A stretch of DNA of 64,000 bases from Histomonas meleagridis 2922-C6/04-290x (taxonomy: Eukaryota > Protista > Parabasalia). Below are positions 11,849 to 28,500 of the stretch, piece by piece (position 1 is the stretch's first letter; each line of letters begins with the position of its first letter). The position numbers and the translations under genes are program-made. Below the pieces are notes generated by a model. The model did not search any database. It was given only the letters and a program-made list of their open reading frames with translations, and was not told the DNA's origin. The stretch is from positions 124,001 to 188,000 of the forward strand of contig JAANOX010000033.1 of assembly GCA_020184695.1 (NCBI GenBank), read 5' to 3'.

Positions 11849-13042
11849 TTATTCTTGTAAAAGGTTTTGCTCAATCTTTTCTCTATTCTTCGTCATAACA
11901 GCGCTAATGCTTTGCAGCCCATCCATTGCACCATTATTTGGGTCAATCTTTAATGCTTCATGAAAAGCTTCTCTTGCTTTTTGGTATTCTTGTATCATGA
12001 AGTAGCAATAAGCCATACGTATGAAAGCTTTTGCATATTTTGGATTAATTTCAATTGCACGTTCGCAATCTTTTATAGCCAAAGGAATCTCTCCAAGTTT
12101 CGAATATGCCACTGCTCTACTTGTATATAATGAATGATTATTCGGAGCGCGTTTAATAGCTTCTGTATAACATTTTATTGCTTCGGGATATTGGCCTTTT
12201 TCGAAGAATTCATTTCCTTCTTTTTTGGCTTTAATAGAAAGCTCTGGATCTAAATATTGTTCTGTTTTACGCTTCATAAGAAGGTCTTCAAGACGCTTCT
12301 TTTCGCGACTTATTTGCGGATCTTGTTTTTCAATAAGTGCAAAGTTTAATGCTTCGACACCTTTCTCAAGATTTCCAAGAGCAACATAATTAACAGATAT
12401 CTTTTGATATGCACGTGAAATATGTTCATATGGTGCAGAATTATCACGGCCAATTTTAATGGATTCTTTACAGATATCTATGGCTTCTTGATATTTCTTT
12501 TGTCGTGAAAGAACTGTAGATTTGTTGGTGTGATAAAGAACATTGGTTGGATCAAGTTTAATGGCAGCTTCATAATGTGAAAGAGCTGATTCTAAATTAC
12601 CATTCTTGAAATATAGATTACCAGCATTTTTCTCTTCTTCAGCTTTTTCCTTTTGTTCTTTTGTCGGCTTTGGGAATTCTTTTTTATGGTTTAAATGAGG
12701 TTTAAATGATTCTAATTGAATCTCTTTTTCAAATGGTTTGATAAGAACTTCAAGAACTTTCATTAAGTTTGCATCATTTTGATACTTGAAGGCATTTTCT
12801 GGACTGGTTTTGAGATCATCGATAATTTGGATAAATGAAGGATCACTAATTATATGAGCAATACTTGGAATCATTTTAAGAATGTCAAGTACTTGTGGAG
12901 CAAAGAGTTGATCCATTCCAAATCCTATCTGTGATTGAATTTTTTGAGTTTTTTTAAGGAATTTGTTTTCCCTTTCTTTTACTGATTCATAATTAATTGT
13001 ACTCTGTAGTTCTAAACTTTCTTGTGTTTGTGATGAAGACAT
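11849..13042 (-). CDS. STI1: Sti1/Hop-like co-chaperone, truncated (DP1-TPR2A-TPR2B only)
   Basis: First ATG at 13042 (the supplied 13102 start is TTG). DP domain DPSFIQIIDDLKTSPEN...DANLMKVL, TPR2A EKNAGNLYFK...LDPTNVLYHTNK and TPR2B KKEGNEFFEKGQYPEAIKCYTEAIKRAP align by eye to Hop. Confidence 0.8.
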   Translation of the reverse strand: MSSSQTQESLELQSTINYESVKERENKFLKKTQKIQSQIGFGMDQLFAPQVLDILKMIPSIAHIISDPSFIQIIDDLKTSPENAFKYQNDANLMKVLEVLIKPFEKEIQLESFKPHLNHKKEFPKPTKEQKEKAEEEKNAGNLYFKNGNLESALSHYEAAIKLDPTNVLYHTNKSTVLSRQKKYQEAIDICKESIKIGRDNSAPYEHISRAYQKISVNYVALGNLEKGVEALNFALIEKQDPQISREKKRLEDLLMKRKTEQYLDPELSIKAKKEGNEFFEKGQYPEAIKCYTEAIKRAPNNHSLYTSRAVAYSKLGEIPLAIKDCERAIEINPKYAKAFIRMAYCYFMIQEYQKAREAFHEALKIDPNNGAMDGLQSISAVMTKNREKIEQNLLQE

Positions 13043-13525
13043 AAAAAATTGTGGATGTTTCCCAAACCGCTGGCTGATTATATTTTCGAATGAAAAATTC
13101 AAACTTATTATTTTTCATTCTATTTTTGTGAGAAATTTGTTTGTTAACAGAAATCAGATACAATCCTCAGAATTTTGAATTGAGACAACAGTAATAAAAT
13201 TCTGACTCCAGAAAGTCACACTAAGAAAGTTAAACGGTATTTCTCACCAGCGGCAAACTTTATTTCATTAACTTGTTAAAGCTATAAATATAAAAATATT
13301 TTGATCACAAGGAAACAAAAGAATTCCATCATTTCGATGCATAAAAATTGCATCATAAAATGACTAACGGCTTAATTCGGGTTGCCCCATGCTTAAGGGC
13401 TGTTACTGTTCGTATTGACAAGCGAAGATGCTAAAAATGATATCATTTTGTTTGTGTTCACCAAAAATAAAAATTTTTATTCATTTTAATTTTTTCCTTT
13501 AAAATCTTTTTATCACATTTTAACT

Positions 13526-16500
13526 TTATTCGTCTCTCATAATATATATTAATATAAATTCAGCCAATAACATTATTACTGCAAAGAAAACCATTGCCAT
13601 CTCTGTCACTTTCTTCTCTTTAGCTCTTCTTATTGAGTCCATTCGTATTTCGGATAGTCTTTTGTTTGTCTTGTCAATTCTCTCATTAATTTCATTGTCA
13701 TTTATGTTTGGATTATTTTCGAGCCATTTTCTTGCATCATTTAATTCATTAATCATTTCGTCCGCGTACTTTTTCTTTAGATTCATATAGCTTGGAATTT
13801 CCTCAATTGAGTTATCAATGCTCGAAAGCGCGTGATCATAACGATCTTTGTTGCGAAGAATATTGGCTACTTTCTCATCACTATCTTCACGTTTTTGATT
13901 GATTACTTGAGCATCGTTACATGTGTCGACATTATCTTTGAACCAATTTTCGGTATAATAAATTTCTTGAAGTGCTTTTTTGATTTTAGGGTTCGTTTGA
14001 TCATATGAATCTGATAAAAGTAGTTCTCGTGTTAATGTTATGTATTCTTTCATATCTTTGATTGCATATTCAAGTTGTTCTTGTTTTAGAATGGAATTTT
14101 GCACATTTCTTTTTGTTTCTTCTAATTTGTTTTTGATTTGGTCAAGATCAGGATCAATGTTTTTTTGAAGCCATTCATTGGATTCTTTAATTATATTGAT
14201 TGCATTTTGGATATGTTTTTTAGTTGTGTCGTATTTATTTTTAATTATTTCATTCGTTTCTTGATTATAATCGTTTAACTCTTGTTTTATACGTTCAATA
14301 TGATTTTGTTCTTCAAGTAATTCTTCGATATTTTGTTTCGTTTCTTCAAATTTGTTGTTGATTAATTCAAGATCGGAAATTTCGTTTTCTTGAATCCATT
14401 TTTTGGTTTCATCAATTATTTTAATTACATTTTTGACATTCTTTTTAGTATCATCATATTGATCTTCGATTCTATTAGTTACTTCATAAATATATTCATT
14501 AATTCCCAAAATTGCTAAGTCAATTGGATCATTTGTCTCGAATAAATGTTGTACTCTTTTTTGCGTTTCATCAAATTTATCATTTATCTCTTCAAGACTA
14601 GGATCAGAATTTTCAAGCCAAACTTTCGCATTTTGAAGTTCACCAAGCGCTTTTTGTATGTTGCGTTTACTTTTGTCTTCTTCGTTGACTGAATTTGATT
14701 TTTCTTCTATATAACTAATGAATTTTTTAATTGTTTCTTCAATTTGTTGTTGATTTCCGAATAAATCTTTGAGTTTTAATTCAATTTCATTAAATTCATT
14801 ATCAATTTGTTCATAATTTGGATCATTGTTTTCTTGAATCCATTTTTCTAAGTCATTTATTAATTCGCATACTTTTTTAATGTTATTTTTATTTTTGTTA
14901 TAATTCGTTTCAATTAATTCTCGTTTTTCAGTGATATAATTTTTAATTTCATTTATTGAATTATCGATTTTCTTTTGATCATCAAATAAATTTTGGATTT
15001 TTTCTTTATTTTCATTGATTTTAGATTCGATTGTTTCCGTCTTTATATTAGTATCTGGATAACTTTCATTAATCCATTTTTTAGTTTGATCAAGGACACT
15101 AATTATATTTTTGATGTTTTTCTTATTTTTGTCATAATCATTCTCAATTAATTCAATAATTTGAGATTCATATTGATTAAATGCATCAATTGGATCATCC
15201 TTATTAAGTAATTCATTCATTTGTTCTTTGATTTCAATTATTTTATTTTTGATTTCAGTTATTTCATCATTTACATCAGATGTATTAAGTAACTTTTGTT
15301 TTTGAATCCAATTTTCAACTTCATCTAATTTTTGAAATGCATCTTTGATATATCTTTTATTTTGGTCACATTTCTTTAAATTTGAGACTTCATTTTGGAT
15401 ATATTCCATTAAAATTTTCTTCACACTTAAAAATTCCATAAGTTGTTCATCTTCTTCTTTTAATTTATCAATTTCTTCATCATTAAGTCTTCCTTTATTA
15501 CTTGTAATTGTAATTCCATTTGATTGTTTAGTTGCTTCGGATTCAGCTTTAACAGTAAGAATACCATTTTCATCAACATTGAAAGTAACAGAAATATCAT
15601 TATTGGTATTATTAGCATCATAAGTTTCATTCTCAAGTCTAAATTTCCCAAGTTCAAAGTTATTTGCAAGCACAGGATCTTCTCCTTGATAAATATTAAT
15701 TATTATATTTTTTGATTTTTTGAATTCATATTCTTTTTTCTGAGATGTTGGAATTGTTGTGCCACGTTTTAGTATAATATCCATAAAATAATCACCATTT
15801 TGTTTCTTAGCTTTAATGCCAAGTGAATGTGGAATTACATCTCGTATAATTAATTTTTCTTTTTCGTCGGGATTCGTAAGATTTGCTGCTATTAGTGCTG
15901 CGCCTTGTGCAACTGCTGTTTCTGGATCAATGCCTCGAAGTGGGTCTTTTCCAAAGTATTCCCAAAGCATTTCACGTACATATGGGATTTTGGATGAACC
16001 ACCAACAAGGACAATATCATCAATGTCTTCAGGTTCCATATTAATCTCATTAATGAGATTTTTAATAGTGGCTAATGTTGTTTGAAATAGAACCTTATTC
16101 ATATTTTCGAATTCTTCGCGTGTTATAGATTCTTTGAAATCAATTCCATGATATAAATTTGGACAATACAAATCGGTTTTGTTCATTTGCGATAAATTAA
16201 TTTTTCCCTTTTCGCATTCACCCTTTAATATACTTCTCGCTCGTAAATCTTTGCTGATGTCGCAATTATTTTTTTCGTTGAAGATTTTGATGAAATGCTC
16301 AACCATGTTGTTATCAAAATCTTGACCACCAAGATGCATATTACCATCTGTCGCTAAGACTGTGTAACAATTGTCTTCGGCTTCAAGAATTGAAACATCA
16401 AATGTACCACCACCAAGGTCATACACGAGAACATGTTTCTTTCCTGGTGACTTGTTATTGTAACAATATGCAATAGCTGCAGCCGTTGGTTCATTGATAA

Positions 16501-17011
16501 TTCGGATGACATTTAAACCTGCAAGTTTGCCTGCATCTTTTGTTGCTTGACGTTGACCGTCATTAAATGATGCTGGAACTGTAATGACCGCATCAACAAC
16601 TTCATAGCCAAGATATTCCTCAGAAGCTTCTTTTGATTTCTTTAAGATTTGTGCTGAAATTTGTTCTGGATATAAATATATGTTTCCCCATTTAATGATG
16701 GGACGACCATATGGCCCTGGCTTTACCTTAAATGGCCAAGTATGAAGAGCTTCTATATTTGAAATATTTGAGTATTGAAGACCAATCAAGCGCTTAATAT
16801 CAAAAAATGTATATTCAGGATTCATAGGCGCTCCGTCTTTTGCAGGATCACCAACAAGCACTTCATCATCTGTATAAGAAACTATTGATGGAATTGCGTA
16901 TTTATCATTAAACTTTATATTCTCGACTCCATTTCCGTTGTTTTTATAAGCAGCACTAGTGTATGTGGTACCAAGATCTATTCCAATTGCAGTGCACTTC
17001 TTTGGTTGCAT
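13526..17011 (-). CDS. Atypical Hsp70 A: ATPase + SBD-beta + 8 helical repeats + C-terminal TM anchor
   Basis: ATG at 17011 (the supplied 17065 start is GTG). Motifs: GIDLGTT, TVPASFNDGQRQATKDAG, EPTAAA, DLGGGTFDVS, LVGGSSKIP, SBD-beta TFNVDENGILTV. C-terminus MAMVFFAVIMLLAEFILIYIMRDE. Confidence 0.93.
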   Translation of the reverse strand: MQPKKCTAIGIDLGTTYTSAAYKNNGNGVENIKFNDKYAIPSIVSYTDDEVLVGDPAKDGAPMNPEYTFFDIKRLIGLQYSNISNIEALHTWPFKVKPGPYGRPIIKWGNIYLYPEQISAQILKKSKEASEEYLGYEVVDAVITVPASFNDGQRQATKDAGKLAGLNVIRIINEPTAAAIAYCYNNKSPGKKHVLVYDLGGGTFDVSILEAEDNCYTVLATDGNMHLGGQDFDNNMVEHFIKIFNEKNNCDISKDLRARSILKGECEKGKINLSQMNKTDLYCPNLYHGIDFKESITREEFENMNKVLFQTTLATIKNLINEINMEPEDIDDIVLVGGSSKIPYVREMLWEYFGKDPLRGIDPETAVAQGAALIAANLTNPDEKEKLIIRDVIPHSLGIKAKKQNGDYFMDIILKRGTTIPTSQKKEYEFKKSKNIIINIYQGEDPVLANNFELGKFRLENETYDANNTNNDISVTFNVDENGILTVKAESEATKQSNGITITSNKGRLNDEEIDKLKEEDEQLMEFLSVKKILMEYIQNEVSNLKKCDQNKRYIKDAFQKLDEVENWIQKQKLLNTSDVNDEITEIKNKIIEIKEQMNELLNKDDPIDAFNQYESQIIELIENDYDKNKKNIKNIISVLDQTKKWINESYPDTNIKTETIESKINENKEKIQNLFDDQKKIDNSINEIKNYITEKRELIETNYNKNKNNIKKVCELINDLEKWIQENNDPNYEQIDNEFNEIELKLKDLFGNQQQIEETIKKFISYIEEKSNSVNEEDKSKRNIQKALGELQNAKVWLENSDPSLEEINDKFDETQKRVQHLFETNDPIDLAILGINEYIYEVTNRIEDQYDDTKKNVKNVIKIIDETKKWIQENEISDLELINNKFEETKQNIEELLEEQNHIERIKQELNDYNQETNEIIKNKYDTTKKHIQNAINIIKESNEWLQKNIDPDLDQIKNKLEETKRNVQNSILKQEQLEYAIKDMKEYITLTRELLLSDSYDQTNPKIKKALQEIYYTENWFKDNVDTCNDAQVINQKREDSDEKVANILRNKDRYDHALSSIDNSIEEIPSYMNLKKKYADEMINELNDARKWLENNPNINDNEINERIDKTNKRLSEIRMDSIRRAKEKKVTEMAMVFFAVIMLLAEFILIYIMRDE
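13650..15430 (-). repeat. Eight degenerate ~75-codon helical repeats inside Hsp70 A
   Basis: Trp codons (plus-strand CCA at 15308, 15074, 14840, 14618, 14396, 14171, 13943, 13724) recur every 219-234 nt. Each lies in a helix-W-x-(E/D/K)-N-like context followed by another amphipathic helix. Boundaries are approximate. Confidence 0.85.
15881..16623 (-). repeat. Left arm of inverted near-identical patches shared by the two Hsp70 genes
   Basis: By-eye alignment: 16466-16623 is the exact reverse complement of 19346-19503 (158 bp). 16193-16433 matches 19536-19776 (241 bp, 1 mismatch seen). About 15881-16030 matches about 19940-20088 with a few mismatches. Confidence 0.88.
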
Positions 17012-17780
17012 GCAAAAATAATGGTAAAATATGCCAAATACAAAAAACTGACGTAACCGTAACACTTTTCAATTTCTTTGTTAAAATGAGATCTAGATTC
17101 TCTTACATATTTAATATAAATGAATATATATTCTCACATTATGATATATATACTTTAAATTATCACATAGATTTAAAATCAATTTCGTCATAAGAAATTC
17201 ATATTTTGACATTAGAAAATCAATAACTTTTTGATCTAAAATTTTAGATCGAATGGCAGCTGATCAAATATCATTCATTCAAACACGATATAGTGTCAAA
17301 TATATTTGACAAAAAGTGTACTTAACTTGAAAAATAAATAAAAATCATTTTTTTACGAAATTCGCTCCTTAGATATTTTTAATCCTAGTACTTACATTTA
17401 CATACTTATTTCAATGAAGTATGTCAATTAAAATATCTTTTATCGGCTTATATTTAAGACATCATATTTTTAAAATTCAATATATATTTGGTGGAATCGT
17501 CCATTTTTTTCAATAAATTTGAATGAAGCAAACAATATTTAAAGGTATGATGGAATACCTAATGAATATATTTTTTAGCCTTTCTGTTCGTTATTTTTGT
17601 TAATTATGCTTTTTGATATAAATTGGCAAAAATTAATTGAGTAGTTTATTCAAATTATCCCTTCAATCGTTCTCATTCAAATCCGATTGCCCCCCTTATC
17701 AAACGTTCTACCGAATTGAAATGAAACTAGAGACATTTTAATAAGTGACATGATTATCAAATCCCCAGTAAAATTTTTAT

Positions 17781-18560
17781 TTATATCTGCAAAACATTAT
17801 TTCGCATTTCTTCGTTAACTGGTTCAAATTCTTCTGTTGATGTAATATTTTTGTTTGAACTTTTCACATTGTTTCGCATTTTACTTCTTCGAATTAATGT
17901 TATAACAAATCCTGTAATTAAAAGAACAATAGTAATTGAGCCACAGATAATACCAAACAATCCTAACGATGGTATTTTTGCATTTTGTGTTTCTGTTTGT
18001 TTAACTGCATATAATTTATTATAAGAAAATGCGATATTTGAAGTATTTGCAGTTATAAATTTATTCGAATTTGTAAATGTATTTGATTTAGTAAATGTAT
18101 TCGAAAATGTATTTGTTGGTGGAAGACATTCATTGACAGTTTTATCACTGAATGTAAATGATGTTATCATATTAGATCTCACTTGTATATTCTGAAATGC
18201 ATTTTCACCAATAATTGGTGAGCTTTCTCCATTATAACATTTAAGTTGATCGTAATCTTGAAATGTTTCATCTCCAATTGTCTTTAAATTCTCTCCCAAT
18301 GTGACCCATTCTAAATTAGTACATGTACAAAATGCACGATATTCATTCGTTGTAATTAATGTTGGAATTGTAACTGTATCACTAATTTGCACCGTTTCAA
18401 GCATTCAATTTTGGAATTGATGTGACTCCACTTGAAACAATAATATTTAATGCGTTCGTATTATAACTTTATAAATTGGCTATATTATCAGACCTTGTAA
18501 TTGCAATTGTTTGTGTATTATAATTTCATGATACTGAATGTGAATATTAGAAAAACCATA
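17781..18560 (-). pseudogene. Decayed BspA-like surface protein gene between the two Hsp70s
   Basis: The ORF 17781-18404 has LRR remnants (LEWVTLGENLKTIGDETF), an SNTF stalk and the TM GIICGSITIVLLITGFVITLI. The BspA-type N-terminus (NALNIIVSSGVTSIP) lies upstream in another frame with stops. The 5' boundary is approximate. Confidence 0.75.
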
Positions 18561-18928
18561 AGCAACGAATTAATTAAAATTTCGTATACTTCAATCTTAT
18601 ATTTTATTATATTATTTCTTAATAAATTTAAAATAAAAGTTAAAAGAAAAACTATAACTATTGAGCAAATTATATAATTTAGATTATAACTATCAGAAAT
18701 ATGTATCAATAATGTCTGAATTTGCATAAACAATTTCACGTCATTAGGAGAGAGCTTATGACCTGTTGGTCTTATTTTTGATATAATAAATGATTCATCA
18801 ATGCGCCTTCTATCGTTCCTGTATTACTCAGAAATTATTTAACCGTCAATTTCAACGTTCACCTCAACTCGAGTTTGGCATATTTTGCTTTTGCGGTTTT
18901 AGAATGCAGTTTGGCATTTTTAATTGAA

Positions 18929-18933
18929 TCATT
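18929..18933 (+). promoter_or_regulatory. Inr-like element TCATT
   Basis: TCAYT/A consensus starting 20 nt upstream of the Hsp70 B ATG at 18949. Confidence 0.5.
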
Positions 18934-18948
18934 TTTTAATTTGCTAGG

Positions 18949-21900
18949 ATGAAAAATAACAAACGACATACAACTGTAGGTATTGATCTTGGTACCACAT
19001 ACTCCTCTATTTCTTTATGTATTGATGGACAAACTACAATAATTGCTGATAATTCGGGAAATTCTGCAATACCTTCATATGTTACTTTTTACAAAGATGG
19101 TATATTAGTTGGCTCTTCCGCAAAGAACTACGCGCCTATATGTCCACAAAACACAATTTTTGATTCAAAGCGTATGATTGGGCTAAAATACAAAGATATT
19201 GTAGAAGAAAAAATGTATTGGCCATTCGAAGTTGTTGAAAGAGAAAACGGACTTCCAAAAATTAAGGTTAATTGGTGCGATAAAATTCGCTTCTTCTATC
19301 CAGAACAGATTTCAGCACAAATCTTAAAACAACTTAAAACAAATGCTGAGGAATATCTTGGCTATGAAGTTGTTGATGCGGTCATTACAGTTCCAGCATC
19401 ATTTAATGACGGTCAACGTCAAGCAACAAAAGATGCAGGCAAACTTGCAGGTTTAAATGTCATCCGAATTATCAATGAACCAACGGCTGCAGCTATTGCA
19501 TATGGTGTTCATAACAATTCACCAGAAAAGAAGCTTGTTCTCGTGTATGACCTTGGTGGTGGTACATTTGATGTTTCAATTCTTGAAGCCGAAGACAATT
19601 GTTACACAGTCTTAGCGACAGATGGTAATATGCATCTTGGTGGTCAAGATTTTGATAACAACATGGTTAAGCATTTCATCAAAATCTTCAACGAAAAAAA
19701 TAATTGCGACATCAGCAAAGATTTACGAGCGAGAAGTATATTAAAAGGTGAATGCGAAAAGGGAAAAATTAATTTAACAGGTCTTAAAACTGTACCAATC
19801 AAATGTCCAAAACTTTATAATGGAATTGATCTTGAAGCTGTTATAACACGCGAAGAATTCGAAGATATGAATAAGGATCTATTTCAAACAACATTAACCA
19901 CAATTAAAAACGTTCTTATACGCATTGGAAAGACCCCTAAAGACATTGATGATATTGTCCTTGTTGGTGGTTCATCCAAAATCCCATATGTACGTAAAAT
20001 GCTTAAAGCATACTTTGGAAAAGACCCACTTCGAGGCATTGATCCAGAAACAGCAGTTGCACAAGGCGCAGCACTTATAGCAGCAAATATAGCAGAAGGC
20101 GAAGAAAAGAAGTTTAAATTTAAAGATATTCTTCATCATTCTTTAGGTCTCAAAGTTGGAAGGGATCAAATGGATTTTGTATTAAAAGCAGGCAGAGATA
20201 TTCCATGTAATGAAACAGCAACATATCGTACAATAGATACTAATCAAAATAGAATGGATTTAGACGTTTATGAAGGCGAAAATGTGAGTGTAACCAAAAA
20301 TCAATTTCTTGGAAAAATAATGATTGAAGGTATTCCACCTGGTCCACCTGGATCACAAAAAATTGATGTTAATTTTCAAATTGATGAAAATAACATTTTG
20401 ATTATTAATGGAAAATTACAAAATTCGGATCAAAATAATTTACTTGAAATTATGTTAAATAAGTCGAATCTTACTGAACAAGAAGTAATTGAAATTTCCG
20501 AACAAGAAAAAATAGATAATGAATACTTTGAGAAACTTGAAAAGACAAAAGATGATTTAATGAATTATATTAGTGAAATTAAGAATGAAATTAATAATTA
20601 TGATGATAAAGACAATCAAAATATTAGAGATGCTGAAGATAAGATTAATGAACTTGAAATATGGTTTGAAAATACTGATAATGAATATACTCTTAAATCA
20701 ATTAATGAAAAATTAAATCAAACGAAAGAAGTAATTCAACAATTACTTATACCAAAACCAACATATAAATTGAATATGTATATTAAACAAATAAATGGTA
20801 ATGAATTAACAATTCCTTTAAGTAAACAACTTCAAAATATAAAAGCAGATATAGAAAATTGGATCAATGATAACAAAGATGTTGGCGAAGATGAAGTTAC
20901 AATTAAACATAACGAAACTAAAGACAAAATCGATGATTTGTTTAACATACAAAATCAAATTAATGAATCGATTAAAGAATTCAATGAATACATTCAAAAA
21001 GAAAAAGATTCAATTGAAGAAAATCAAGAATTATATCATTATATTAAATTAGAATTACAAAAAGTAATTAATGAATCCGAAGATTTTATTGACCATGAAA
21101 AAGATAACTTCGACAATTCAAATGAAATTTCATCAAAATATAATGAAATCAAAGATAAAATCAAACATTTATATGATCAACAAGACAAATTAAAAGATTT
21201 AATTAATGAATTTAATGATTATCTTCAAAAGACAAAAGATGAAAATAACGAATTAACAAATAACATTAAACAAAAACTTGAACGATTAATTGAAGAAGGA
21301 GAAAATTATCTAAATTATGAAAAAGATAATTATAATTTGGATGATGTTAATAAGAAATATAATGAAATCAAAGATAAAGTGAATAAATTATTAAACAAAG
21401 ATAAAGAAATCAAAGGAAAAATTCAACAATTTAATGAATATATCCAAAACACAAAAGATCAAATCAAAGACAATAAACAAAAGATAATCAACGAAGTTAA
21501 AGTAGAAGTTGAAAGTAAAATCGAAAATGTCGAAAATTGGTTACAAGAAGAACATAAATTAAAAGAAATCAATTCGGAATTCGATAAATTCACGCAAGAT
21601 ATCAAACTTTTAATTGGGGAACTTATTATTTACCCTGAGCCAACACCAACGCCAACGCCCGATAACAACGAAGAAAAGTCAGAAATCGAGATTGTAAAAT
21701 CATGTTTCAATGATTACATTCAAGAAACATTGGATGACATCGATAGTGGCTGTTATAATCGCGCAGAAGTGGAGAAACAAAAAGAAGCAAAGAACGTACT
21801 GACTGAAGCGAAGAATTGGGTTAATAATGATGAGCTGTCTGTCAAAGAAGTGAACGAAAAATTGGATCAAATCAAAAAAGAAGTCCTCGATTTGATTGGA

Positions 21901-22020
21901 AAGCCAGACAAAAATCCACCGTATCCAAAGATGAGGCGTTTGCCAATTGTGAAAGTGACAATCGGAGCTATTTCACTTCTGGTAATCATCGAATTTATCT
22001 TCGCTTTCTTCTGTAAGTGA
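18949..22020 (+). CDS. Atypical Hsp70 B: ATPase + SBD-beta + 6 helical repeats + C-terminal TM anchor
   Basis: Motifs: GIDLGTTYS, TVPASFNDGQRQATKDAG, DLGGGTFDVS, LVGGSSKIP, SBD-beta GIPPGPPGSQKIDVNFQIDENNIL. PEPTPTPTP linker. C-terminus IVKVTIGAISLLVIIEFIFAFFCK. Confidence 0.93.
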   Translation: MKNNKRHTTVGIDLGTTYSSISLCIDGQTTIIADNSGNSAIPSYVTFYKDGILVGSSAKNYAPICPQNTIFDSKRMIGLKYKDIVEEKMYWPFEVVERENGLPKIKVNWCDKIRFFYPEQISAQILKQLKTNAEEYLGYEVVDAVITVPASFNDGQRQATKDAGKLAGLNVIRIINEPTAAAIAYGVHNNSPEKKLVLVYDLGGGTFDVSILEAEDNCYTVLATDGNMHLGGQDFDNNMVKHFIKIFNEKNNCDISKDLRARSILKGECEKGKINLTGLKTVPIKCPKLYNGIDLEAVITREEFEDMNKDLFQTTLTTIKNVLIRIGKTPKDIDDIVLVGGSSKIPYVRKMLKAYFGKDPLRGIDPETAVAQGAALIAANIAEGEEKKFKFKDILHHSLGLKVGRDQMDFVLKAGRDIPCNETATYRTIDTNQNRMDLDVYEGENVSVTKNQFLGKIMIEGIPPGPPGSQKIDVNFQIDENNILIINGKLQNSDQNNLLEIMLNKSNLTEQEVIEISEQEKIDNEYFEKLEKTKDDLMNYISEIKNEINNYDDKDNQNIRDAEDKINELEIWFENTDNEYTLKSINEKLNQTKEVIQQLLIPKPTYKLNMYIKQINGNELTIPLSKQLQNIKADIENWINDNKDVGEDEVTIKHNETKDKIDDLFNIQNQINESIKEFNEYIQKEKDSIEENQELYHYIKLELQKVINESEDFIDHEKDNFDNSNEISSKYNEIKDKIKHLYDQQDKLKDLINEFNDYLQKTKDENNELTNNIKQKLERLIEEGENYLNYEKDNYNLDDVNKKYNEIKDKVNKLLNKDKEIKGKIQQFNEYIQNTKDQIKDNKQKIINEVKVEVESKIENVENWLQEEHKLKEINSEFDKFTQDIKLLIGELIIYPEPTPTPTPDNNEEKSEIEIVKSCFNDYIQETLDDIDSGCYNRAEVEKQKEAKNVLTEAKNWVNNDELSVKEVNEKLDQIKKEVLDLIGKPDKNPPYPKMRRLPIVKVTIGAISLLVIIEFIFAFFCK
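19346..20088 (+). repeat. Right arm of inverted near-identical patches shared by the two Hsp70 genes
   Basis: Reverse complement of the patches at 15881-16623 (see that entry). Confidence 0.88.
20550..21900 (+). repeat. Six degenerate helical repeats inside Hsp70 B
   Basis: In-frame W/F/Y codons at 20662, 20860, 21085, 21307, 21538 and 21817 (spacing 66-93 codons) sit in the same helical context as in Hsp70 A. Boundaries are approximate. Confidence 0.8.
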
Positions 22021-22583: not shown

Positions 22584-25500
22584 TTATGAATTTTGTTTCG
22601 TCACCAAAGAATTTGAAGATTGTCCATAAAAGACTTCAAATTCCTTTTCGTCCTTTCCGACTATCATGATTGCCTTATCTGAAGCGCCATAAGCTCTGTC
22701 AATTCCACATTGTGGGTTTGTCTTCAAAAATACAGTACCATTCACAGAACACAAAAACAAAGTATTTTCACTCCAACACCACAAATATCCATTATCCTCA
22801 TCGAACGCACAGCCATTTATTATTTCATCGAATTCTATAACTTTAATTATAACTGATCTTATGAAATCCCATAACACAACTTTTTTCTCAAATGACGTAG
22901 CACACAAATAATCCGTTTCATCAATAGCACTTGATGGTTTTGTATTAGCTACAAAGTAATTCAAGAACATTATATCAAATGGTTTCTTTTTCTTCTTATA
23001 CAAAACTCTATACACAGACGACACTCCAAAGTCATGATCTATAACCAAATAATTACCATTCATTGAAGAATTGATTGAAACAGCAGACAAAAACGAAGAA
23101 TCCTCGAGGATCAGGGGCACCCCTCCAATTTGAATACGTAAAACCGTTGATTTTGGCAAAATCTGTGATTTGAATTGGCAAATGAACGTTGAGCAATTTT
23201 CGGTTTTATAAACCTTAGAAATCTGCTTTTTGAATGGTTGATTTAACGGTATTTTCTTACCTGTCAACAAGTTTTTGAATGTGTTTGATATCCATCTGTT
23301 TAAGTTTATATTTGTTTTAGTGATTTCATCTCTGTTTTCTATGATTGCTTGATAAGCCTCATTCCCTTTAAATACCTCAGGTATTGTGAAATGAGCGAAA
23401 GTAAAAGAAAGAACAAATTCTTCATTACAAATATTAAAAGGATAAATCTTTTCGAAGTTTAACAAAGTTTCGGTGTACAACGAAGGGAATATAATACCAT
23501 TTTCATCATCGATTAAGTTCGACGAATATCTTCCATCGATATAATTAAGTTTTAATAAGAAATCATATGAAGATATTTCGCCATTTAACCATTCTTGAAG
23601 GAAGTTTTGTAGGTTTAAATCATCGAACAAGAACTTTGTTTTAGGCGAATAATCAATTGGCTTCTTGTTCTTAAAGAATGCAAATGCATCTTTAGGTAAA
23701 TCTAAAAGGGAAAACTCAGCTGTATGTTGTATGATTAAATGAAGCATGTTTTCATGTATAGAACTATGAAGGATTTCATTAGTGTTATATTTAAGTATTG
23801 GATGTCCACAAAAGAATGAATATTTTCCATATTCTTTAAGGAAAAGCGATTTAAGAAAGTCATCAAATTCTTTGGTAGGTTCATAATCATTTAATATTAA
23901 ATGATGTTCTGTTTCATTATATGTGGCTAACAATAATATACAGATTTTGGTATTAAATATAAATAAAACACATTCAAACACTTGTGAATATCGTGAAAAT
24001 TTGGTATTAAATGCTTTCTTAAAGATACTTTGTTTTTGATGGAAATTTATAAATGTATATAATGGTATCGTTTTAGATGTAGAGATTATTGAATTATAAT
24101 AAGAAGGATTTACAAAGTCTATTAATGGTAAAAGTGGTGTTTTAGTTTTGATTTTCTCATATGGAAGTAAAGTTGCCAATTTTGTCCTATCGTCGTTCAT
24201 CGGCATTTTTTCAATTAAATTCGGTTGTAAAATTCGAGAAGGATACATCGGCTGAGATAAACCTGCCAATCTTCTTTCTTGTTCTATTGAATATACATTA
24301 TAATCAGAGAGGACACAAGATAACTCAGAAATCCATACATTAGAAGCAAGACTTTCACATACTCTAATTGAAGCTGTAATTGTAAAATCAAACATAAATT
24401 GTATAATTTCTTTAATTTCTTTTTCATGATAATTAATTAACTTTTTAATTATAGTTTGCTTAACATAAGGTATTGAATATTGTAAATAAATAACAAAATC
24501 ATTATAATAACTATCAACATTAAAGTTAATAATATTTTGGAATTTTGATGTGAAATTATGATATAGCGGAACGATAAGCGTATTTAAATAGTTTACAAAC
24601 TCATCGTCTATGTCAATTGTATTTGAAAAGAATTGTTCTTGACCGTTTTTGACGAATTGAGAAATCACATCATAAACGATTTGAGCTTGAGGATGTTTAA
24701 TTTCTTTCACAAAGAACATAGCAAACGATTTTTGGGAGAAATATTCATTATATAATAACCCGAATAAATAAGAAGCATTTGGAGAGAATGAAGTAATATG
24801 AGGATATAATAATATAAACAAAAACAAAGAAAATTTCTTTTTACGATTTAATTGTTGATCGCCCAAAATATTAATTGATCTTCCAAGTGTTGATAACGAA
24901 TTAATGTTAACGAATTGGAATAATATTCCAAATAATACACGTATTGATCTAATAACAATTTTTTGATTAAATTTCGATAAAACTTTTTCGATGAAATCAA
25001 ACAAAGTAGAAATTAAATTCTGTTTAAAGTGATTTGAAACACTTAAAACTTTTGATATAATACATAAAACACAAGAAATCGATTCAGGTTTAATATCCTT
25101 TAAGTATAATGTAAGAGATTCTAATAAATCTGGTAAAATTTTCATCATCAATTGAAAAGGAATTTCTTCGTATTGAAAAGGCGAAAAAAATAAAATGGAA
25201 TTTAACATATTAACTAAATGATTTAATTGTTGATTAATATTACTTGTGATGAAAGAAAGCATAAATTGATGATAATTCATTTTACATAACAAGATAATTT
25301 TATCTTCAATAGTTATTTCATTATTTTGATTTAATTTTACATTACATTTAATGATACAATTATTAATTTGTTTAATTATTTCATTTATTGATTTGGTCTC
25401 TAAAAAGTTTTGATCATTAAAATTTGTTGTTAATGAATATAATTTATTATCAATATTAAAATCATTAATTAATATTTGACAAAAACGATTATATATAATA

Positions 25501-28500
25501 TCTTTCTCTTCAATATTTATATTATCTTCTAAATTCGTTGGGATTTCGATTTGATCAATCGATAATATAAATGGACAATAAATGACTATCGGATTAATTA
25601 TATCATTTGAAGGAATTGTTTTTATTGGAATTGACTTAAATAATGACGAAAGAATATTAAATCCATCGATAACAAATTTTTCTAAAAATGGAATTAAATC
25701 TTTTTCTTGTTTAGTAGAATAACTATACGATAATATAATCGAACCACATAAAACTAATGAAATTGTTGGTACTAAAGCTTTTTCATATGAAATTCTTGAA
25801 TTAGAAAACAAGTTTAATAATGAAATTTCATTATCATCGAAACTATTTGATTTATTATTCATTGTTAATAATGAAAATAGACCAATCCAAATTGATTTTT
25901 GATCAATAACTCGATCTATTTGTAATGGTATATCATATTCGAAATTAGGAAAAGCTGATTTTAAGTCAAACAAAATTTGGAATAATATAAATATTTCATC
26001 AGATGTACCATATGATAATATATGATCAATTAATTCTTGACTAAAATAATTAGTCTCAAGTAATGATCGATGTTTTTCAATTGATTTTAATAATAAAGTT
26101 CGTTGTAATGAAGTAAAATAATTCATAGATTCATTCTGTGATTTTATTGAGAATACATATAATAAAACAAATTTAATTTTATCTTCCATTTTATATTTAA
26201 AGAATATATTTATCATAAATTCAAAAAATTCTTCAACTGGATATGTCTTAGGATAAACAGTTGATATTAATACTAAATAAAATAAACATGTTTTCCTTAT
26301 GAAATATTTGTTAGCTAATTCTTTTGTCTTTAAGTTCTTTGTAATTAAAAATAAAATTGTTTTAACAGAATCAGGTAAAATTTTCATCCATAATTCAACA
26401 TCAAGTGTTAATGAATATATTCGTTTTATTATTTCATCTTCTGGTAAATTTTGGAATATGAAATCAATAATTAAAGTGAAATGTTGTGTATTTAAATTAG
26501 AACTTAATATCTTTATTGTATATATGAAATAATCCCAAAAATTCGGGACTTTAAAGTTATTAATTTTCAAAAAGTTTAATGATATATTTATTAATTTATA
26601 TAATGTGTTAGAATCATTAGTTTTAGATATTAATTTAAAAAATCTTGATAAAAAAATTGGTATTTTTAAAAAGTATAAAAATCCTTGATAAGGTACTAAT
26701 GTAGTATTTTTACCAATTTGAAATTCTTTTAAATGTGAACCTAATAAAATACAATTTTTAAATTTTCCTATATTACCAGGACCATTTTTAATGATATCAT
26801 CAATTATTTTATTTGGAGTTTTAACTTGTTCCATAAAACATTGGATATTTGATGATAAAAACCATGGAGAATCAACAAACTCATCTTTAACACCAAATAT
26901 TGTTGTTGAAATTTTGATTTCATTTGATATATGAAATTTTTGATCATCAATTAATATATTTAATGTTTCTCCATGATAATTTATCGGATTTGTTGTAACA
27001 AATATTAAATGCCATTGATTAACTTTAAAGTTTTGAATAACTTTTTGTATTTTTTTGTATTTTATTGTTAAAGTTTCATTCTCTATTTCAATTAATATTG
27101 AACCTGCTTGAAACATATTTAAAGGTTTTATAAAATTCGAAGATGATTTAAACCAAAAATATATCGAATAATATGGAATATTAATTTCGATATAAGAAAA
27201 TTGTTTATTTGGAAAGAATTCATATAAAGGGAAATGATCAGAATTAACATCAACGAATTCGGAAATGTTTTCAGGATTTTTTAACATTGAAGAAGCAGTT
27301 TCTAAAGTTAAATATCTATTTGCTATTTTTGATAAATTAATTTGTGTATTATTAATCTTTTGATACATTGGTATTGCATATTTACCAATATTTACATAAT
27401 CGAATTGAGATCGAGTATCTATAGGTTGATTTAAGAATGGTATTAATGCTGGTAATGTAAATGGTTCTTTTTTATTATTACCATTAAACATTTGTAAATA
27501 TAATTGATTACTCATATGGAATAAAGGATGTTCTATATTTAACTTTAATAACATTTCATTTAACTTCTTTTTAAATCCATTCGTTGCTAAAAATATAACA
27601 AAATTTGTTAAATCTTGATCAGTAAATTCAGGATTTCCAAATAATGGCTCAAGTAATAAAAGTCCATTAATTTTTATAATCAATGATATCATAAAAGAAT
27701 TACCTACAACTAAAGACATAACAGATGCAAATAATTCTCGTGAATAAGCTTCGGGTAACTTCTTAAAAAACATTATGAATTGTGCTTCTTCTGGATTTAT
27801 AGTTAACATATTAGTAATAAGTTTTATAAATAAATCTATTGGTATTATATATTTCGATGTTGACATTAATTTCGATATTAAAATAGGCTTTTGATCAATA
27901 CTTTTTGTATAAATAAATATTAAAAGGTTTTGAAATGAGATAAATTTGCTTAAAATTGTTCCTAATTCTTCAGATGTTAAATCAGCTAAATAAAAGTTAA
28001 TTAATGAATTTATGGATTCTTCATCTGTTGATATTAAATTGTCTGTAAGCATCTTTTGTAAGATTGGATCAAGTAATTCAAATTCAGGCTTTAAAAAATT
28101 TAATAATTTCAAAAAAATGGTTGTAACGGATTCAAAATTACAATTAACTAATCCTGAAAATAATTGTATTAACATCGGCTTAAAGCCATCTATCCTAAAA
28201 TGTGTATATGAAAAAATATCAACAAAATGGAAATAACGGTTCATCTTTTTGATGTTGATCGTATCGTCGTTTACCAATTCAATTAAAACCGAAAACATGA
28301 AATTATAAACGGATTTGGAAGAATATGAATTATTAAGCTGAAGAGAGATGAATTGGGAAACAGGTTGATTTGGTAAACATGATTCTTTATAGTCATGACT
28401 CTTCATAAGCCTTATAAAGATTATTTTAAAATCATCAGTATCTGTTGAAATAGATTGGAAAATAGTAAAAATTCCATTGACTTTAAGAAGATTATTCATA

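What the first reader, a model, noticed from the sequence alone, without database searches (positions are those of the whole stretch)
13526..22020. Head-to-head pair of tail-anchored Hsp70s on long helical stalks: candidate undescribed membrane-tethered chaperone system
Seen: two divergent genes (1161 and 1023 aa). Each has all Hsp70 ATPase motifs and an SBD-beta, then 450-600 aa of helical repeats, then one hydrophobic segment within a few residues of the C-terminus. The domain starts 7-9 residues after Met, so there is no signal peptide, and there is no EEVD or KDEL. Established: canonical Hsp70s are soluble and about 650 aa, and this topology defines tail-anchored proteins with the bulk facing the cytosol. 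Inference: ATP-driven chaperone heads held away from an organelle surface (ER or hydrogenosome) by a spacer, perhaps for protein import, membrane quality control or coat remodelling. I know of no characterised Hsp70 with this architecture, but I cannot search.
Basis: partly seen in the sequence, partly recalled or inferred. Interest (0 to 1): 0.88.

Follow-up and report, generated by a model that had tools for sequence, protein, structure and literature searches.

The report
Tail-anchored Hsp70s on multiplied-lid stalks
Two neighbouring genes of a gut parasite (almost certainly Histomonas meleagridis) encode intact Hsp70 chaperones whose own small helical "lid" domain has been copied 5-7 extra times into a long stalk that ends in a membrane anchor; this design is almost undescribed and would fix the chaperone directly to a membrane.

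Summary
Gene A (13526-17011, minus strand, 1161 aa) and gene B (18949-22020, plus strand, 1023 aa) are intact, divergently oriented ORFs. Each has a full Hsp70 NBD, SBD-beta and lid (Pfam E about 1e-150), with catalytic residues conserved. Neither has an N-terminal hydrophobic segment, EEVD or KDEL. Each has one strongly hydrophobic 20-21-residue segment 1-3 residues from the C-terminus.

New here: the stalk is not a generic coiled coil. It is a tandem amplification of the Hsp70 lid three-helix bundle, with 7 extra copies in A and 5 in B. Support comes from an HMM built from extra units only (68 canonical Hsp70 lids hit, 0 decoys), hhalign (E 5.7e-6) and fold matches to solved Hsp70 lids.

A third paralog (1013 aa) in the same genome has the same plan. 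RNA contigs join SBD, stalk, anchor and 3'UTR.

The family is not wholly undescribed. A 2023 paper notes three ~1000-aa Trichomonas vaginalis Hsp70s with a C-terminal domain "without known homology" that co-purify with ER-hydrogenosome tether (ERMES) baits. I could not fetch those sequences.

Another first-stage note on this same stretch also proposed lid amplification. Membrane insertion, location and function remain inferred.

Verdict: new variant of a known kind, moderately high interest.

The parts
13526..17011 (-). Gene A, 1161-aa tail-anchored multi-lid Hsp70 (protein P0001)
   Evidence: ORF. Pfam HSP70 E 1.2e-151. RNA contigs cover 13412-15446 and 14215-15923 with 0 differences.
15872..17011 (-). 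Gene A nucleotide-binding domain (aa 1-380)
   Evidence: D10, K71, E175, D199, T204, D206 and K271 equivalents are conserved. Model pLDDT is above 90 here.
15497..15859 (-). Gene A SBD-beta (aa about 385-505)
   Evidence: Covered by the Pfam HSP70 match. The model shows beta strands at 388-491. Pocket loops are diverged and the linker reads KLIIRDV.
15206..15481 (-). Gene A native lid (aa 511-602: helices A/B, C, D; Trp568)
   Evidence: Model helices 511-546, 553-571 and 577-602. Hit by the HMM built from extra units, i-E 3.3e-8.
13634..15202 (-). Gene A stalk: 7 extra lid-bundle units of about 75 aa (aa 604-1126; Trp646, 724, 798, 872, 947, 1023, 1096)
13538..13600 (-). Gene A C-terminal transmembrane segment (aa 1138-1158, MAMVFFAVIMLLAEFILIYIM), followed by RDE and the stop codon
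   Evidence: Maximum KD19 is 2.67; this is the only hydrophobic segment. It lies inside RNA contig X4 record 8.
18949..22020 (+). Gene B, 1023-aa tail-anchored multi-lid Hsp70 (protein P0003)
   Evidence: ORF. Pfam HSP70 E 9.5e-160. RNA runs hold 0.89-0.97 of its sampled words.
20521..20757 (+). Gene B native lid (aa 525-603)
   Evidence: Hit by the HMM built from gene A's extra units, i-E 2.6e-11.
20767..21906 (+). Gene B stalk: 5 extra lid units (aa 607-986). Two have F/Y in place of Trp. A PTPTPTP linker lies before the last unit.
21955..22014 (+). Gene B C-terminal transmembrane segment (aa 1003-1022, VTIGAISLLVIIEFIFAFFC), followed by K and the stop codon
   Evidence: Maximum KD19 is 2.52.
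16193..16675 (.). Gene-conversion tract, arm in gene A (partner 19294-19776 in gene B). Further arms: 15861-16033 with 19936-20108, and 16059-16165 with 19804-19910.
   Evidence: The inverted repeat is 483 nt and 95% complementary. Third-codon-position identity is 0.9-1.0 inside the tract against about 0.45 outside. RNA contigs cross between A and B at this tract (joints).
17026..17038 (-). TTTGGCATATTTT motif, 15-27 nt upstream of gene A's ATG
   Evidence: An identical copy at 18874-18886 (+) lies 63-75 nt upstream of gene B's ATG. Variants lie upstream of the P0122 and P0129 genes.
18874..18886 (+). TTTGGCATATTTT motif upstream of gene B, with a second variant TTTGGCATTTTTA at 18910-18922

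Best explanation
Genes A and B, with a third paralog elsewhere in the genome, belong to a parabasalid-specific family of Hsp70 chaperones.

Shown:
- Each protein has a catalytically intact Hsp70 ATPase domain, an SBD-beta and the native lid.
- The native lid is followed by 5-7 further copies of the lid's three-helix bundle (helix B C-terminal half, helix C, helix D).
- The protein ends in a single hydrophobic helix, with 1-4 residues after it.
- The genes are transcribed, and the pair is being homogenised by gene conversion in the ATPase domain.

Inferred:
- The proteins are made in the cytosol and inserted post-translationally by the C-terminal helix as tail-anchored proteins.
- The most likely target is the ER or an ER-derived membrane.
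- The ATP-driven head therefore works in the cytosol at the end of a rod of lid bundles. In the model, long helices run from one bundle into the next, as in spectrin. About 4 nm per bundle would give roughly 25-35 nm; this was not measured.
- This would place Hsp70 at a membrane surface permanently, without J-protein or TPR receptors. It could hold or hand over unfolded clients such as organelle precursors. It might act at ER-hydrogenosome contacts, where the probable T. vaginalis counterparts co-purify with ERMES.
For: Hsp70 identity and intact catalytic residues.

Single C-terminal TMD and no N-terminal hydrophobic segment. Gene B has no possible in-frame N-terminal extension.

Periodic units.

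Lid origin of the stalk:
- An HMM built only from 17 extra units hits residues about 535-603 of canonical Hsp70s. It hits 68 real proteins and 0 reversed decoys at E<0.1, best 2e-8.
- hhalign of extra units against canonical lids gives probability 85.5% and E 5.7e-6, with Trp aligned on Trp.
- The AF2 model of one extra unit has pLDDT 88. Its top Foldseek matches are 3LOF, 4PO2, BiP, PfHsp70-x, DnaK and Sse1 lids.
- VIA-align gives Z 11.4 to BiP 547-629.
- Language-model neighbours of the tail carry HYOU1_C and HSP70 C-terminal domains (a lead only).

The full-length model shows alternating helices of about 45 and about 20 residues.

The family forms a clade with 99% SH-aLRT support, outside BiP and outside canonical cytosolic Hsp70. 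Paralog P0002 has the same plan.

Transcription:
- RNA contigs run from aa 363 to 932 and from aa 522 through the stop codon into the 3'UTR, with 0 differences. Flanking intergenic DNA has zero depth.
- RNA runs hold 0.81-0.97 of the sampled words of both genes.

ER-side hint: T. vaginalis Hsp70-1/2/3 are 996-1009 aa, with a C-terminal 398-406 aa of no known homology. They were pulled down by 3-4 ERMES baits together with DnaJs, Rabs and coatomer (PMC10648710).
Against: - No experiment shows membrane insertion, topology or location.
- No dedicated TM or signal-peptide predictor was available; only hydropathy was used.
- Both TMDs contain a Glu (AEFI in A, IEFI in B).
- I could not obtain the T. 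vaginalis sequences, so their orthology, lid repeats and anchor are untested.
- The co-IP lists in that paper are rich in abundant endomembrane proteins and may reflect nonspecific co-purification.
- The interdomain linker is partly charged (KLIIRDV, KFKFKDI). The SBD-beta pocket loops are diverged. Canonical allostery and peptide binding are therefore not assured.
- The three-helix-bundle fold alone is weakly discriminating: de novo bundles score Z 9.2-9.6.
- The first ~265 nt of gene A are not covered by the RNA contigs that were shown.
- Rod geometry rests on a model whose tail pLDDT is 55-90.
Confidence: 0.7

Rival explanations
1. The architecture is the same, but the anchor sits in the hydrogenosome outer membrane. 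The Hsp70 then acts as a built-in import motor or receptor for hydrogenosomal precursors, in place of the missing Tom70/Tom20-type receptors.
For: Parabasalid hydrogenosomes carry many tail-anchored proteins. These include chaperone-like receptors Tom36 and Tom46 with Hsp20 and TPR domains (PMC6334971; PMC3174187). ERMES baits that pulled down the T. vaginalis long Hsp70s span the ER-hydrogenosome contact.
Against: The hydrogenosomal membrane proteome paper lists only 'cytosolic HSP70' as adhering material and no Hsp70 among its 12 C-tail-anchored proteins. The TMDs here are long (20-21 aa) and very hydrophobic (KD 2.5-2.7). Their C-terminal tails are short and not strongly basic (RDE, K). From general knowledge of tail-anchor sorting, not tested here, that profile favours the ER.
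Confidence: 0.15
2. The C-terminal hydrophobic helix is not a membrane anchor. It is an oligomerisation or client-mimicking element. The proteins would be soluble, rod-shaped Hsp70 oligomers, or self-inhibited by binding their own tail.
For: Each TMD contains a Glu. Hsp70 SBDs bind hydrophobic peptides. Isolated Hsp70 lids crystallise as oligomers (multi-chain entry 3LOF).
Against: A hydrophobic stretch of 20-21 residues with KD above 2.5, preceded by a basic cluster and placed 1-4 residues from the end, is conserved in position in three diverged paralogs. It also occurs in a one-lid paralog, P0252. The probable T. vaginalis counterparts co-purify with membrane baits.
Confidence: 0.08
3. The genes are decaying or non-chaperone derivatives: structural proteins that merely reuse an Hsp70 scaffold, or pseudogenes.
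For: The genome holds truncated or degenerate copies. P0122 is 392 aa. P0129 is 500 aa and has lost the T204 and D206 equivalents. The linker and pocket have diverged in A and B.
Against: The ORFs run 1023-1161 codons uninterrupted in ~30% G+C DNA. All catalytic residues are intact in A, B and P0002. The genes are transcribed. Gene conversion maintains the ATPase core.
Confidence: 0.05
4. The proteins are luminal or secreted BiP-like chaperones held by a C-terminal anchor.
For: BiP chains are among the best solved matches.
Against: There is no N-terminal hydrophobic segment, and gene B has no room for an upstream extension. There is no xDEL ending. In the tree the BiP clade (100% support) excludes them.
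Confidence: 0.02

Closest known systems
Trichomonas vaginalis Hsp70-1/-2/-3 (TVAG_291920, TVAG_479220, TVAG_107710), described in PMC10648710
   Same: Parabasalid Hsp70 paralogs that form their own cluster. They are about 1000 aa with a C-terminal extension of about 400 aa, matching gene B (1023 aa) and P0002 (1013 aa). They associate with endomembrane/ERMES pull-downs.
   Different: The paper calls the extension 'without known homology' and mentions no transmembrane segment. I could not retrieve the sequences, so orthology, lid repeats and anchor are untested. Gene A is longer (1161 aa, 8 lids in all).
Canonical cytosolic Hsp70/Hsc70 (HSPA1A/HSPA8, Ssa)
   Same: NBD, linker, SBD-beta and one lid. 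About 40-42% identity over the first 600 residues. Catalytic residues are conserved.
   Different: The canonical proteins have one lid, a disordered tail ending in EEVD, and are soluble. Here there are 6-8 lids, no EEVD, and a C-terminal TMD. The linker is partly charged and the pocket loops are diverged.
Membrane recruitment of Hsp70 by anchored co-chaperones (ER DNAJB12/14 and yeast Hlj1; Tom70; parabasalid Tom36/Tom46)
   Same: The presumed outcome is the same: Hsp70 activity concentrated at the cytosolic face of an organelle.
   Different: In those systems the anchor is on the J-protein or TPR receptor and Hsp70 is recruited transiently. Here the anchor is part of the Hsp70 polypeptide.
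Hsp110/Grp170 (Sse1, HYOU1)
   Same: Hsp70-superfamily members enlarged at the C-terminal helical domain. The Sse1 lid matches the repeat unit (Z 9.9). HYOU1_C clusters are nearest by language-model features.
   Different: Hsp110 is enlarged by insertions and an extended single lid, not tandem lid copies, and has no TMD. The heads here are closer to Hsp70 proper.
Spectrin-type rods (tandem three-helix bundles joined by continuous helices)
   Same: In the model, helices of about 45 residues run from one bundle into the next, which is the connectivity that makes spectrin repeats a rod.
   Different: There is no sequence relationship. The units here are about 75 aa and derive from the Hsp70 lid. 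The geometry is only predicted.

Membership tests
Hsp70 (PF00012) | Actin-like NBD with the catalytic/phosphate-binding residues (D10, K71, E175, D199, T204, D206 in human numbering) | tested here: met
   All are conserved in A, B and P0002. Pfam E is 1e-150 to 1e-160.
Hsp70 (PF00012) | SBD-beta sandwich followed by an alpha-helical lid | tested here: met
   The Pfam match runs to profile position 594 of 599. The model shows strands at 388-491 and lid helices at 511-602.
Hsp70 (PF00012) | Hydrophobic interdomain linker (DLLLLDV) that couples ATPase and substrate binding | tested here: inconclusive
   A has KLIIRDV, B has KFKFKDI and P0002 has KIKFTDV. The linker is partly hydrophobic with charges inserted.
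Hsp70 (PF00012) | ATP hydrolysis and peptide binding | not testable with these tools
   This needs recombinant protein.
Canonical cytosolic Hsp70 (Hsc70/Ssa type) | C-terminal EEVD motif for TPR co-chaperones | tested here: not met
   A ends in ...IYIMRDE and B ends in ...FAFFCK.
BiP/Grp78 | N-terminal signal peptide, C-terminal K/HDEL, and placement in the BiP clade | tested here: not met
   There is no N-terminal hydrophobic segment and no xDEL ending. The BiP clade (100% support) excludes them.
Tail-anchored membrane proteins | Single TMD within about 30 residues of the C-terminus, with no other TMD | tested here: met
   Hydropathy scan: the only windows with KD19 above 1.6 lie at 1134-1160 in A and 996-1023 in B. 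P0002 and P0252 show the same.
Tail-anchored membrane proteins | No N-terminal signal sequence, so the bulk faces the cytosol | tested here: met
   Maximum KD12 in the first 40 residues is 0.8 to 1.2. Gene B has no in-frame start codon upstream after the preceding stop. Only hydropathy was used, not a trained predictor.
Tail-anchored membrane proteins | Post-translational, carbonate-resistant membrane insertion (GET or another pathway) | not testable with these tools
   This needs fractionation and protease protection.
T. vaginalis long Hsp70 cluster (PMC10648710) | About 1000 aa, with a C-terminal extension of about 400 aa beyond the Hsp70 domain | tested here: met
   B is 1023 aa and P0002 is 1013 aa, against 996-1009 aa in T. 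vaginalis. A is longer.
T. vaginalis long Hsp70 cluster (PMC10648710) | Sequence orthology of head and tail | not tested
   Three database searches and two metagenome pattern scans did not return the T. vaginalis proteins.
Hsp110/Grp170 | Closest sequence relatives are Hsp110-type, with a long acidic insertion in SBD-beta | tested here: not met
   The best solved matches are Hsp70, Hsc70, BiP and Ssb. SBD-beta has only a 4-residue insertion in A.
Spectrin-like repeat rod | Consecutive three-helix bundles linked by one continuous helix | tested here: inconclusive
   The model's helix pattern fits: 658-703, 708-727, 733-773, and so on. Tail pLDDT is 55-90, and I had no access to coordinates.

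The most novel reading that the evidence does not exclude
Parabasalids may have a new way to localise Hsp70. The chaperone is itself tail-anchored. It stands on a rigid, spectrin-like rod built from copies of its own lid, which would fix the ATPase head roughly 25-35 nm from the ER surface. At that distance it could span ER-hydrogenosome contact sites beside ERMES. It would then act as a molecular fishing rod or ruler that hands precursor proteins between cytosol, ER and hydrogenosome. Stalk length (6 or 8 lids) would set the working distance.
Probability: 0.25. Interest if true: 0.8.

Novelty: new variant of a known kind. Interest (0 to 1): 0.62.

Why it matters
Hsp70s are normally soluble. 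They are brought to membranes by anchored J-proteins or TPR receptors.

A genetically tail-anchored Hsp70 would be a distinct solution to placing chaperone activity at an organelle surface. Its spacer is made by multiplying the Hsp70 lid. That would be an unusual example of a regulatory subdomain reused as a structural repeat.

The finding gives a sequence-based explanation for the 'domain without known homology' reported on T. vaginalis Hsp70s that co-purify with ERMES. It yields direct experiments in a transfectable relative: tagging, anchor deletion and lid-number variants.

The organisms are veterinary and human parasites (blackhead disease of turkeys; trichomoniasis). The family appears absent from their hosts.

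Tried and rejected
- Pfam scans of isolated stalk units and of the whole stalk gave only sub-threshold noise. Even the native lid alone does not hit PF00012. A PDB sequence search with the stalk found nothing. The lid origin only appeared with a custom HMM, hhalign and fold comparison.
- A word-indexed search with A's tail found only P0002. A whole-B search and a search with the NBD signature region of P0002 were swamped by canonical Hsp70s and tandem-fusion gene models.
- The exhaustive representative search listed no further multi-lid, TM-bearing member among its best 150. Most long hits are head-to-tail Hsp70 fusions, not this architecture.
- A metagenome scan for GNMHLGGQDFD gave 0 hits.
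- A metagenome scan for I[VI]LVGGSSKIPY[VI] gave 21 loci. Most are bacterial. Three AT-rich ~1000-aa Hsp70s have unrelated helical tails, with no lid-HMM hit and no TMD.
- The AFDB and ESM Atlas fold searches with the full model matched only the Hsp70 head. The one exception is a 1137-aa entry that I could not inspect.
- TRF found no ~225-nt DNA tandem repeat, so the amplification is old or fast-diverged, not recent.
- The downstream TPR genes of A and of P0194 share only generic TPR similarity, so I rejected a duplicated Hsp70-TPR gene pair.
- I rejected a hidden signal peptide. A's 18-codon upstream extension has no ATG, and it coincides with a DNA motif also found upstream of B.
Full report
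**What is there.**
One search shows two long, uninterrupted ORFs on opposite strands that point away from each other.
- Gene A runs 13526-17011 on the minus strand and gives 1161 aa from its first ATG. The ORF continues 18 codons upstream to a GTG, with no ATG in that stretch.
- Gene B runs 18949-22020 on the plus strand and gives 1023 aa.
- The window has about 30% G+C, so ORFs this long are not chance.
- A 207-aa BspA-type LRR ORF with its own TMD (17781-18404, minus strand) lies between the two 5' ends. The genes are therefore divergent but not strictly adjacent.

**Organism.**
- The paralogs and relatives recovered all map to Histomonas meleagridis assemblies GCA_020186115.1 and GCA_020184695.1.
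- The window's own proteins are masked in the databases but show the same 'two contigs' pattern.
- The runs holding the sequence are two DNA samples from 2021, RNA from 2023 and a 2013 cDNA library carrying a SMART adaptor.
- I therefore treat the window as H. meleagridis, a tritrichomonad parabasalid. This is an inference.

**The heads are real Hsp70s.**
- Pfam HSP70 covers residues 8-602 of A (E 1.2e-151) and 10-598 of B (E 9.5e-160).
- The best solved relatives are human Hsp70/Hsc70, BiP and Ssb, at about 40% identity.
- In a 60-sequence alignment, A keeps every nearly invariant catalytic position.
- A column-by-column check shows the D10, K71, E175, D199, GGG, T204, D206, K271 and GG338/339 equivalents intact in A, B and the paralog P0002.
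- The interdomain linker is only partly hydrophobic (KLIIRDV, KFKFKDI, KIKFTDV, against DLLLLDV).
- The SBD-beta pocket loops are diverged. Canonical allostery and client specificity are therefore open questions.

**Topology signals.**
- A 19-residue Kyte-Doolittle scan finds one hydrophobic segment per protein. In A it is 1138-1158 (MAMVFFAVIMLLAEFILIYIM), followed by RDE. In B it is 1003-1022 (VTIGAISLLVIIEFIFAFFC), followed by K.
- Both segments are preceded by basic clusters.
- The first 40 residues are not hydrophobic.
- Gene B's ATG is the first possible start after an in-frame stop.
- A's upstream 18 codons overlap a DNA motif that also precedes gene B. I read that stretch as regulatory or 5'UTR sequence, not as a signal peptide.
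- Neither protein ends in EEVD or xDEL.
- These are the sequence criteria of tail-anchored proteins. Insertion itself is untested.

**The stalk is an amplified lid.**
- In A, Trp residues recur every 73-78 residues in a context (…kkal.el.ea..Wl..N……ei..k..e.k.ki..l) that resembles the helix C/D region of Hsp70 lids.
- An HMM built from A's seven extra units finds the native lids of A (i-E 3.3e-8) and B (2.6e-11). It also finds five extra units each in B and in P0002.
- A second HMM was built only from these 17 extra units, with no native lid included. Searched against 371 other Hsp70s plus their reversed sequences, it hit 68 real proteins and 0 decoys at E<0.1, best 2e-8. The hits always fell at residues about 535-603, which is the lid helical bundle.
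- hhalign of the extra-unit alignment against 15 canonical lids gives probability 85.5% and E 5.7e-6 over 69 columns, with Trp aligned on Trp580.
- AlphaFold2 on one extra unit, using only the extra-unit alignment, gives a three-helix bundle with pLDDT 88.
- Most of the top Foldseek matches for that bundle among 350,542 PDB chains are Hsp70-superfamily lids: 3LOF, 4PO2, BiP, PfHsp70-x, DnaK and Sse1. TM-scores are about 0.7. No individual E-value is below 0.6.
- VIA-align gives Z 11.4, rmsd 1.7 Å over 79 residues, to BiP 547-629.
- De novo three-helix bundles score Z 9.2-9.6. The fold match on its own is therefore weak, and the sequence evidence carries the argument.
- Isolated units do not hit Pfam's HSP70 model. 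That probably explains why the T. vaginalis extension was called 'without known homology'.
- No DNA-level tandem repeat remains, and units are about 30% identical. The amplification is therefore not recent.

**Shape.**
- The full-length model of A has mean pLDDT 81: above 90 in the head and 55-90 in the tail.
- The tail is entirely helical, alternating helices of about 45 and about 20 residues. The last helix of one bundle thus runs on as the first helix of the next, which is the connectivity of spectrin rods.
- A length of about 4 nm per unit (about 25-35 nm overall) is my estimate from helix lengths. It was not measured.

**Family and distribution.**
- P0002 (1013 aa) lies elsewhere in the genome with no partner gene. 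It has the same plan: head, native lid, five extra units and a terminal TMD.
- In a maximum-likelihood tree of the first 540 residues, A, B and P0002 form one clade with two truncated copies (P0122, 392 aa, 80% identical to A; P0129, 500 aa). Support is SH-aLRT 99. The clade lies outside BiP (100) and outside canonical cytosolic Hsp70 (98).
- The same genome has a one-lid Hsp70 with a terminal hydrophobic segment (P0252, 658 aa). It also has two 719-aa Hsp70s with low-complexity tails ending in CTIC and CIIF (P0150, P0194).
- No member from another organism was recovered. I searched with the exhaustive representative search, three word-indexed searches, two metagenome scans, AFDB clusters and the ESM Atlas.
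- These searches were dominated by canonical Hsp70s, so absence is not shown.

**Literature.**
- PMC10648710 (BMC Biol 2023) reports that T. vaginalis Hsp70-1, -2 and -3 form a distinct cluster among 41 paralogs. These are TVAG_291920 (1009 aa), TVAG_479220 (996 aa) and TVAG_107710.
- They carry a C-terminal domain of 398-406 residues 'without known homology'. They were pulled down by 3-4 ERMES baits together with two DnaJ proteins.
- Their size matches gene B and P0002. I could not obtain their sequences, so I propose but did not test that they are the same family.
- The phrase 'tail-anchored Hsp70' occurs nowhere in the searchable library. 'Membrane-bound Hsp70' there refers to lipid-associated tumour-cell Hsp70.
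- Parabasalid hydrogenosomes are known to use tail-anchored chaperone-like receptors, Tom36 and Tom46.

**Expression.**
- Five RNA-type runs hold 0.31-0.86 of gene A's sampled words and 0.89-0.97 of gene B's.
- When laid on 13300-19299, one RNA contig covers 13412-15446 with no differences. That spans aa 522 to the stop codon, the TMD and about 114 nt of 3'UTR.
- Another contig covers 14215-15923 (aa 363-932).
- The intergenic stretches 16900-17300 and 18300-18700 have zero depth in all runs, which argues against DNA carry-over.
- The conserved ATPase region is fragmented, because contigs jump between A and B.
- The first ~265 nt of A are not covered by the contigs shown. Full-length 5' ends are therefore not demonstrated.

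**Concerted evolution.**
- A and B share inverted arms of 483 nt (95%), 173 nt (91%) and 107 nt (86%) within the ATPase domain.
- Third-codon-position identity is 0.9-1.0 in codons 123-272 and 333-377, against about 0.45 elsewhere. This is a mosaic gene-conversion pattern.

**Interpretation.**
- I rate the architecture at about 0.85-0.9: a cytosolic-type, catalytically intact Hsp70 with an amplified-lid stalk and a tail-anchor signal.
- The location (ER or ER-derived membrane, head in the cytosol) and the role (a resident membrane-surface chaperone, possibly at ER-hydrogenosome contacts) are inferences. They rest on TMD properties and the T. vaginalis co-IP data. Overall confidence in the combined statement is 0.7.
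- The rivals are a hydrogenosomal outer-membrane anchor, a non-membrane role for the hydrophobic tail, decay, and luminal residence. Each is listed with its tests.

**Novelty.**
- Hsp70 is a known kind, and long parabasalid Hsp70s have been noted in the literature.
- The tail anchor and the stalk built from multiplied lids are, as far as the tools could show, undescribed.
- I class the finding as a new variant of a known kind.
- Another first-stage note on this same stretch (s1-319278) proposed the lid amplification independently. I tested it here and it holds.

Noticed in passing
window 16193-16675 / 19294-19776 (also 15861-16033 / 19936-20108 and 16059-16165 / 19804-19910): Mosaic gene conversion between the two inverted paralogs, restricted to the ATPase domain. 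Nucleotide identity is 95% and synonymous sites are nearly identical, while the rest of the genes is saturated. RNA-assembly contigs switch between the genes here.
   Followed up: yes
window 17026-17038 (-) and 18874-18886 (+); L002 about 5955-5990; L003 about 4945: An identical 13-mer, TTTGGCATATTTT, lies upstream of both genes' start codons; these are the only two exact copies in 64 kb. TTGGCAT(A/G/T)TTT variants lie upstream of the truncated paralogs P0122 and P0129, but not of P0002 or P0252. It may be a family-specific promoter or 5'UTR element.
   Followed up: partly
window 11849-13102 (-): Directly downstream of gene A on the same strand is a Hop/STI1-like co-chaperone gene (TPR clamp repeats plus an STI1/HOP DP domain), although A lacks an EEVD tail. 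The CaaX-type Hsp70 P0194 is also followed by a TPR gene (L006 5646-7376), but the two TPR proteins share only generic TPR similarity.
   Followed up: partly
L004 3001-4977 (protein P0252, H. meleagridis): A 658-aa Hsp70 with a single lid and a terminal hydrophobic segment (KKLIIIGIVIFLLLLIIIV). It could represent the one-lid tail-anchored state. Its D199 equivalent is Asn, and an HSP20 gene lies 2.5 kb away. T. vaginalis Hsp70s of exactly 658 aa (TVAG_163000, TVAG_300470) also appear in the ERMES pull-downs.
   Followed up: partly
L006 3001-5160 (P0194) and protein P0150 (H. meleagridis): Two 719-aa Hsp70 paralogs with long N/Q/E-rich low-complexity tails ending in CTIC and CIIF. These endings look like CaaX prenylation boxes, a possible second route to membrane attachment of Hsp70 in this genome.
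   Followed up: no
L002 6001-7179 (P0122) and L003 5001-6503 (P0129): Truncated relatives of gene A. P0122 stops after the NBD and is 80% identical to A. P0129 ends within SBD-beta and has lost the T204 and D206 equivalents. They are probably decaying copies. BspA-like genes flank P0122, as in the window.
   Followed up: partly
window 17781-18404 (-), with an 18-nt tandem repeat at 18056-18105: A short BspA-type LRR ORF with a TMD lies between the two Hsp70 genes. RNA depth over 17900-18300 is very high, with many loose ends, which points to a multi-copy family collapsing in the assemblies.
   Followed up: no
window 22584-29162 (-): A 2192-aa ORF converges on the 3' end of gene B. It was not analysed.
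   Followed up: no
L011, L018, L027 (metagenome contigs, 15-24% G+C): Three ~1000-aa Hsp70 ORFs from very AT-rich metagenome contigs. They have long helical C-terminal regions unrelated to the lid repeats and no TMD. L018 ends with a J-domain-like '...YFHPDHYKDN' motif. They appear to be a different kind of extended Hsp70.
   Followed up: partly
AlphaFold DB entry A0A1Y2CI02: A 1137-aa 'HSP70-domain-containing protein' aligned to the gene A model from end to end (residues 4-1136, 25% identity). The organism was not shown and the sequence could not be retrieved. It may be an independent Hsp70 with a long helical tail.
   Followed up: no
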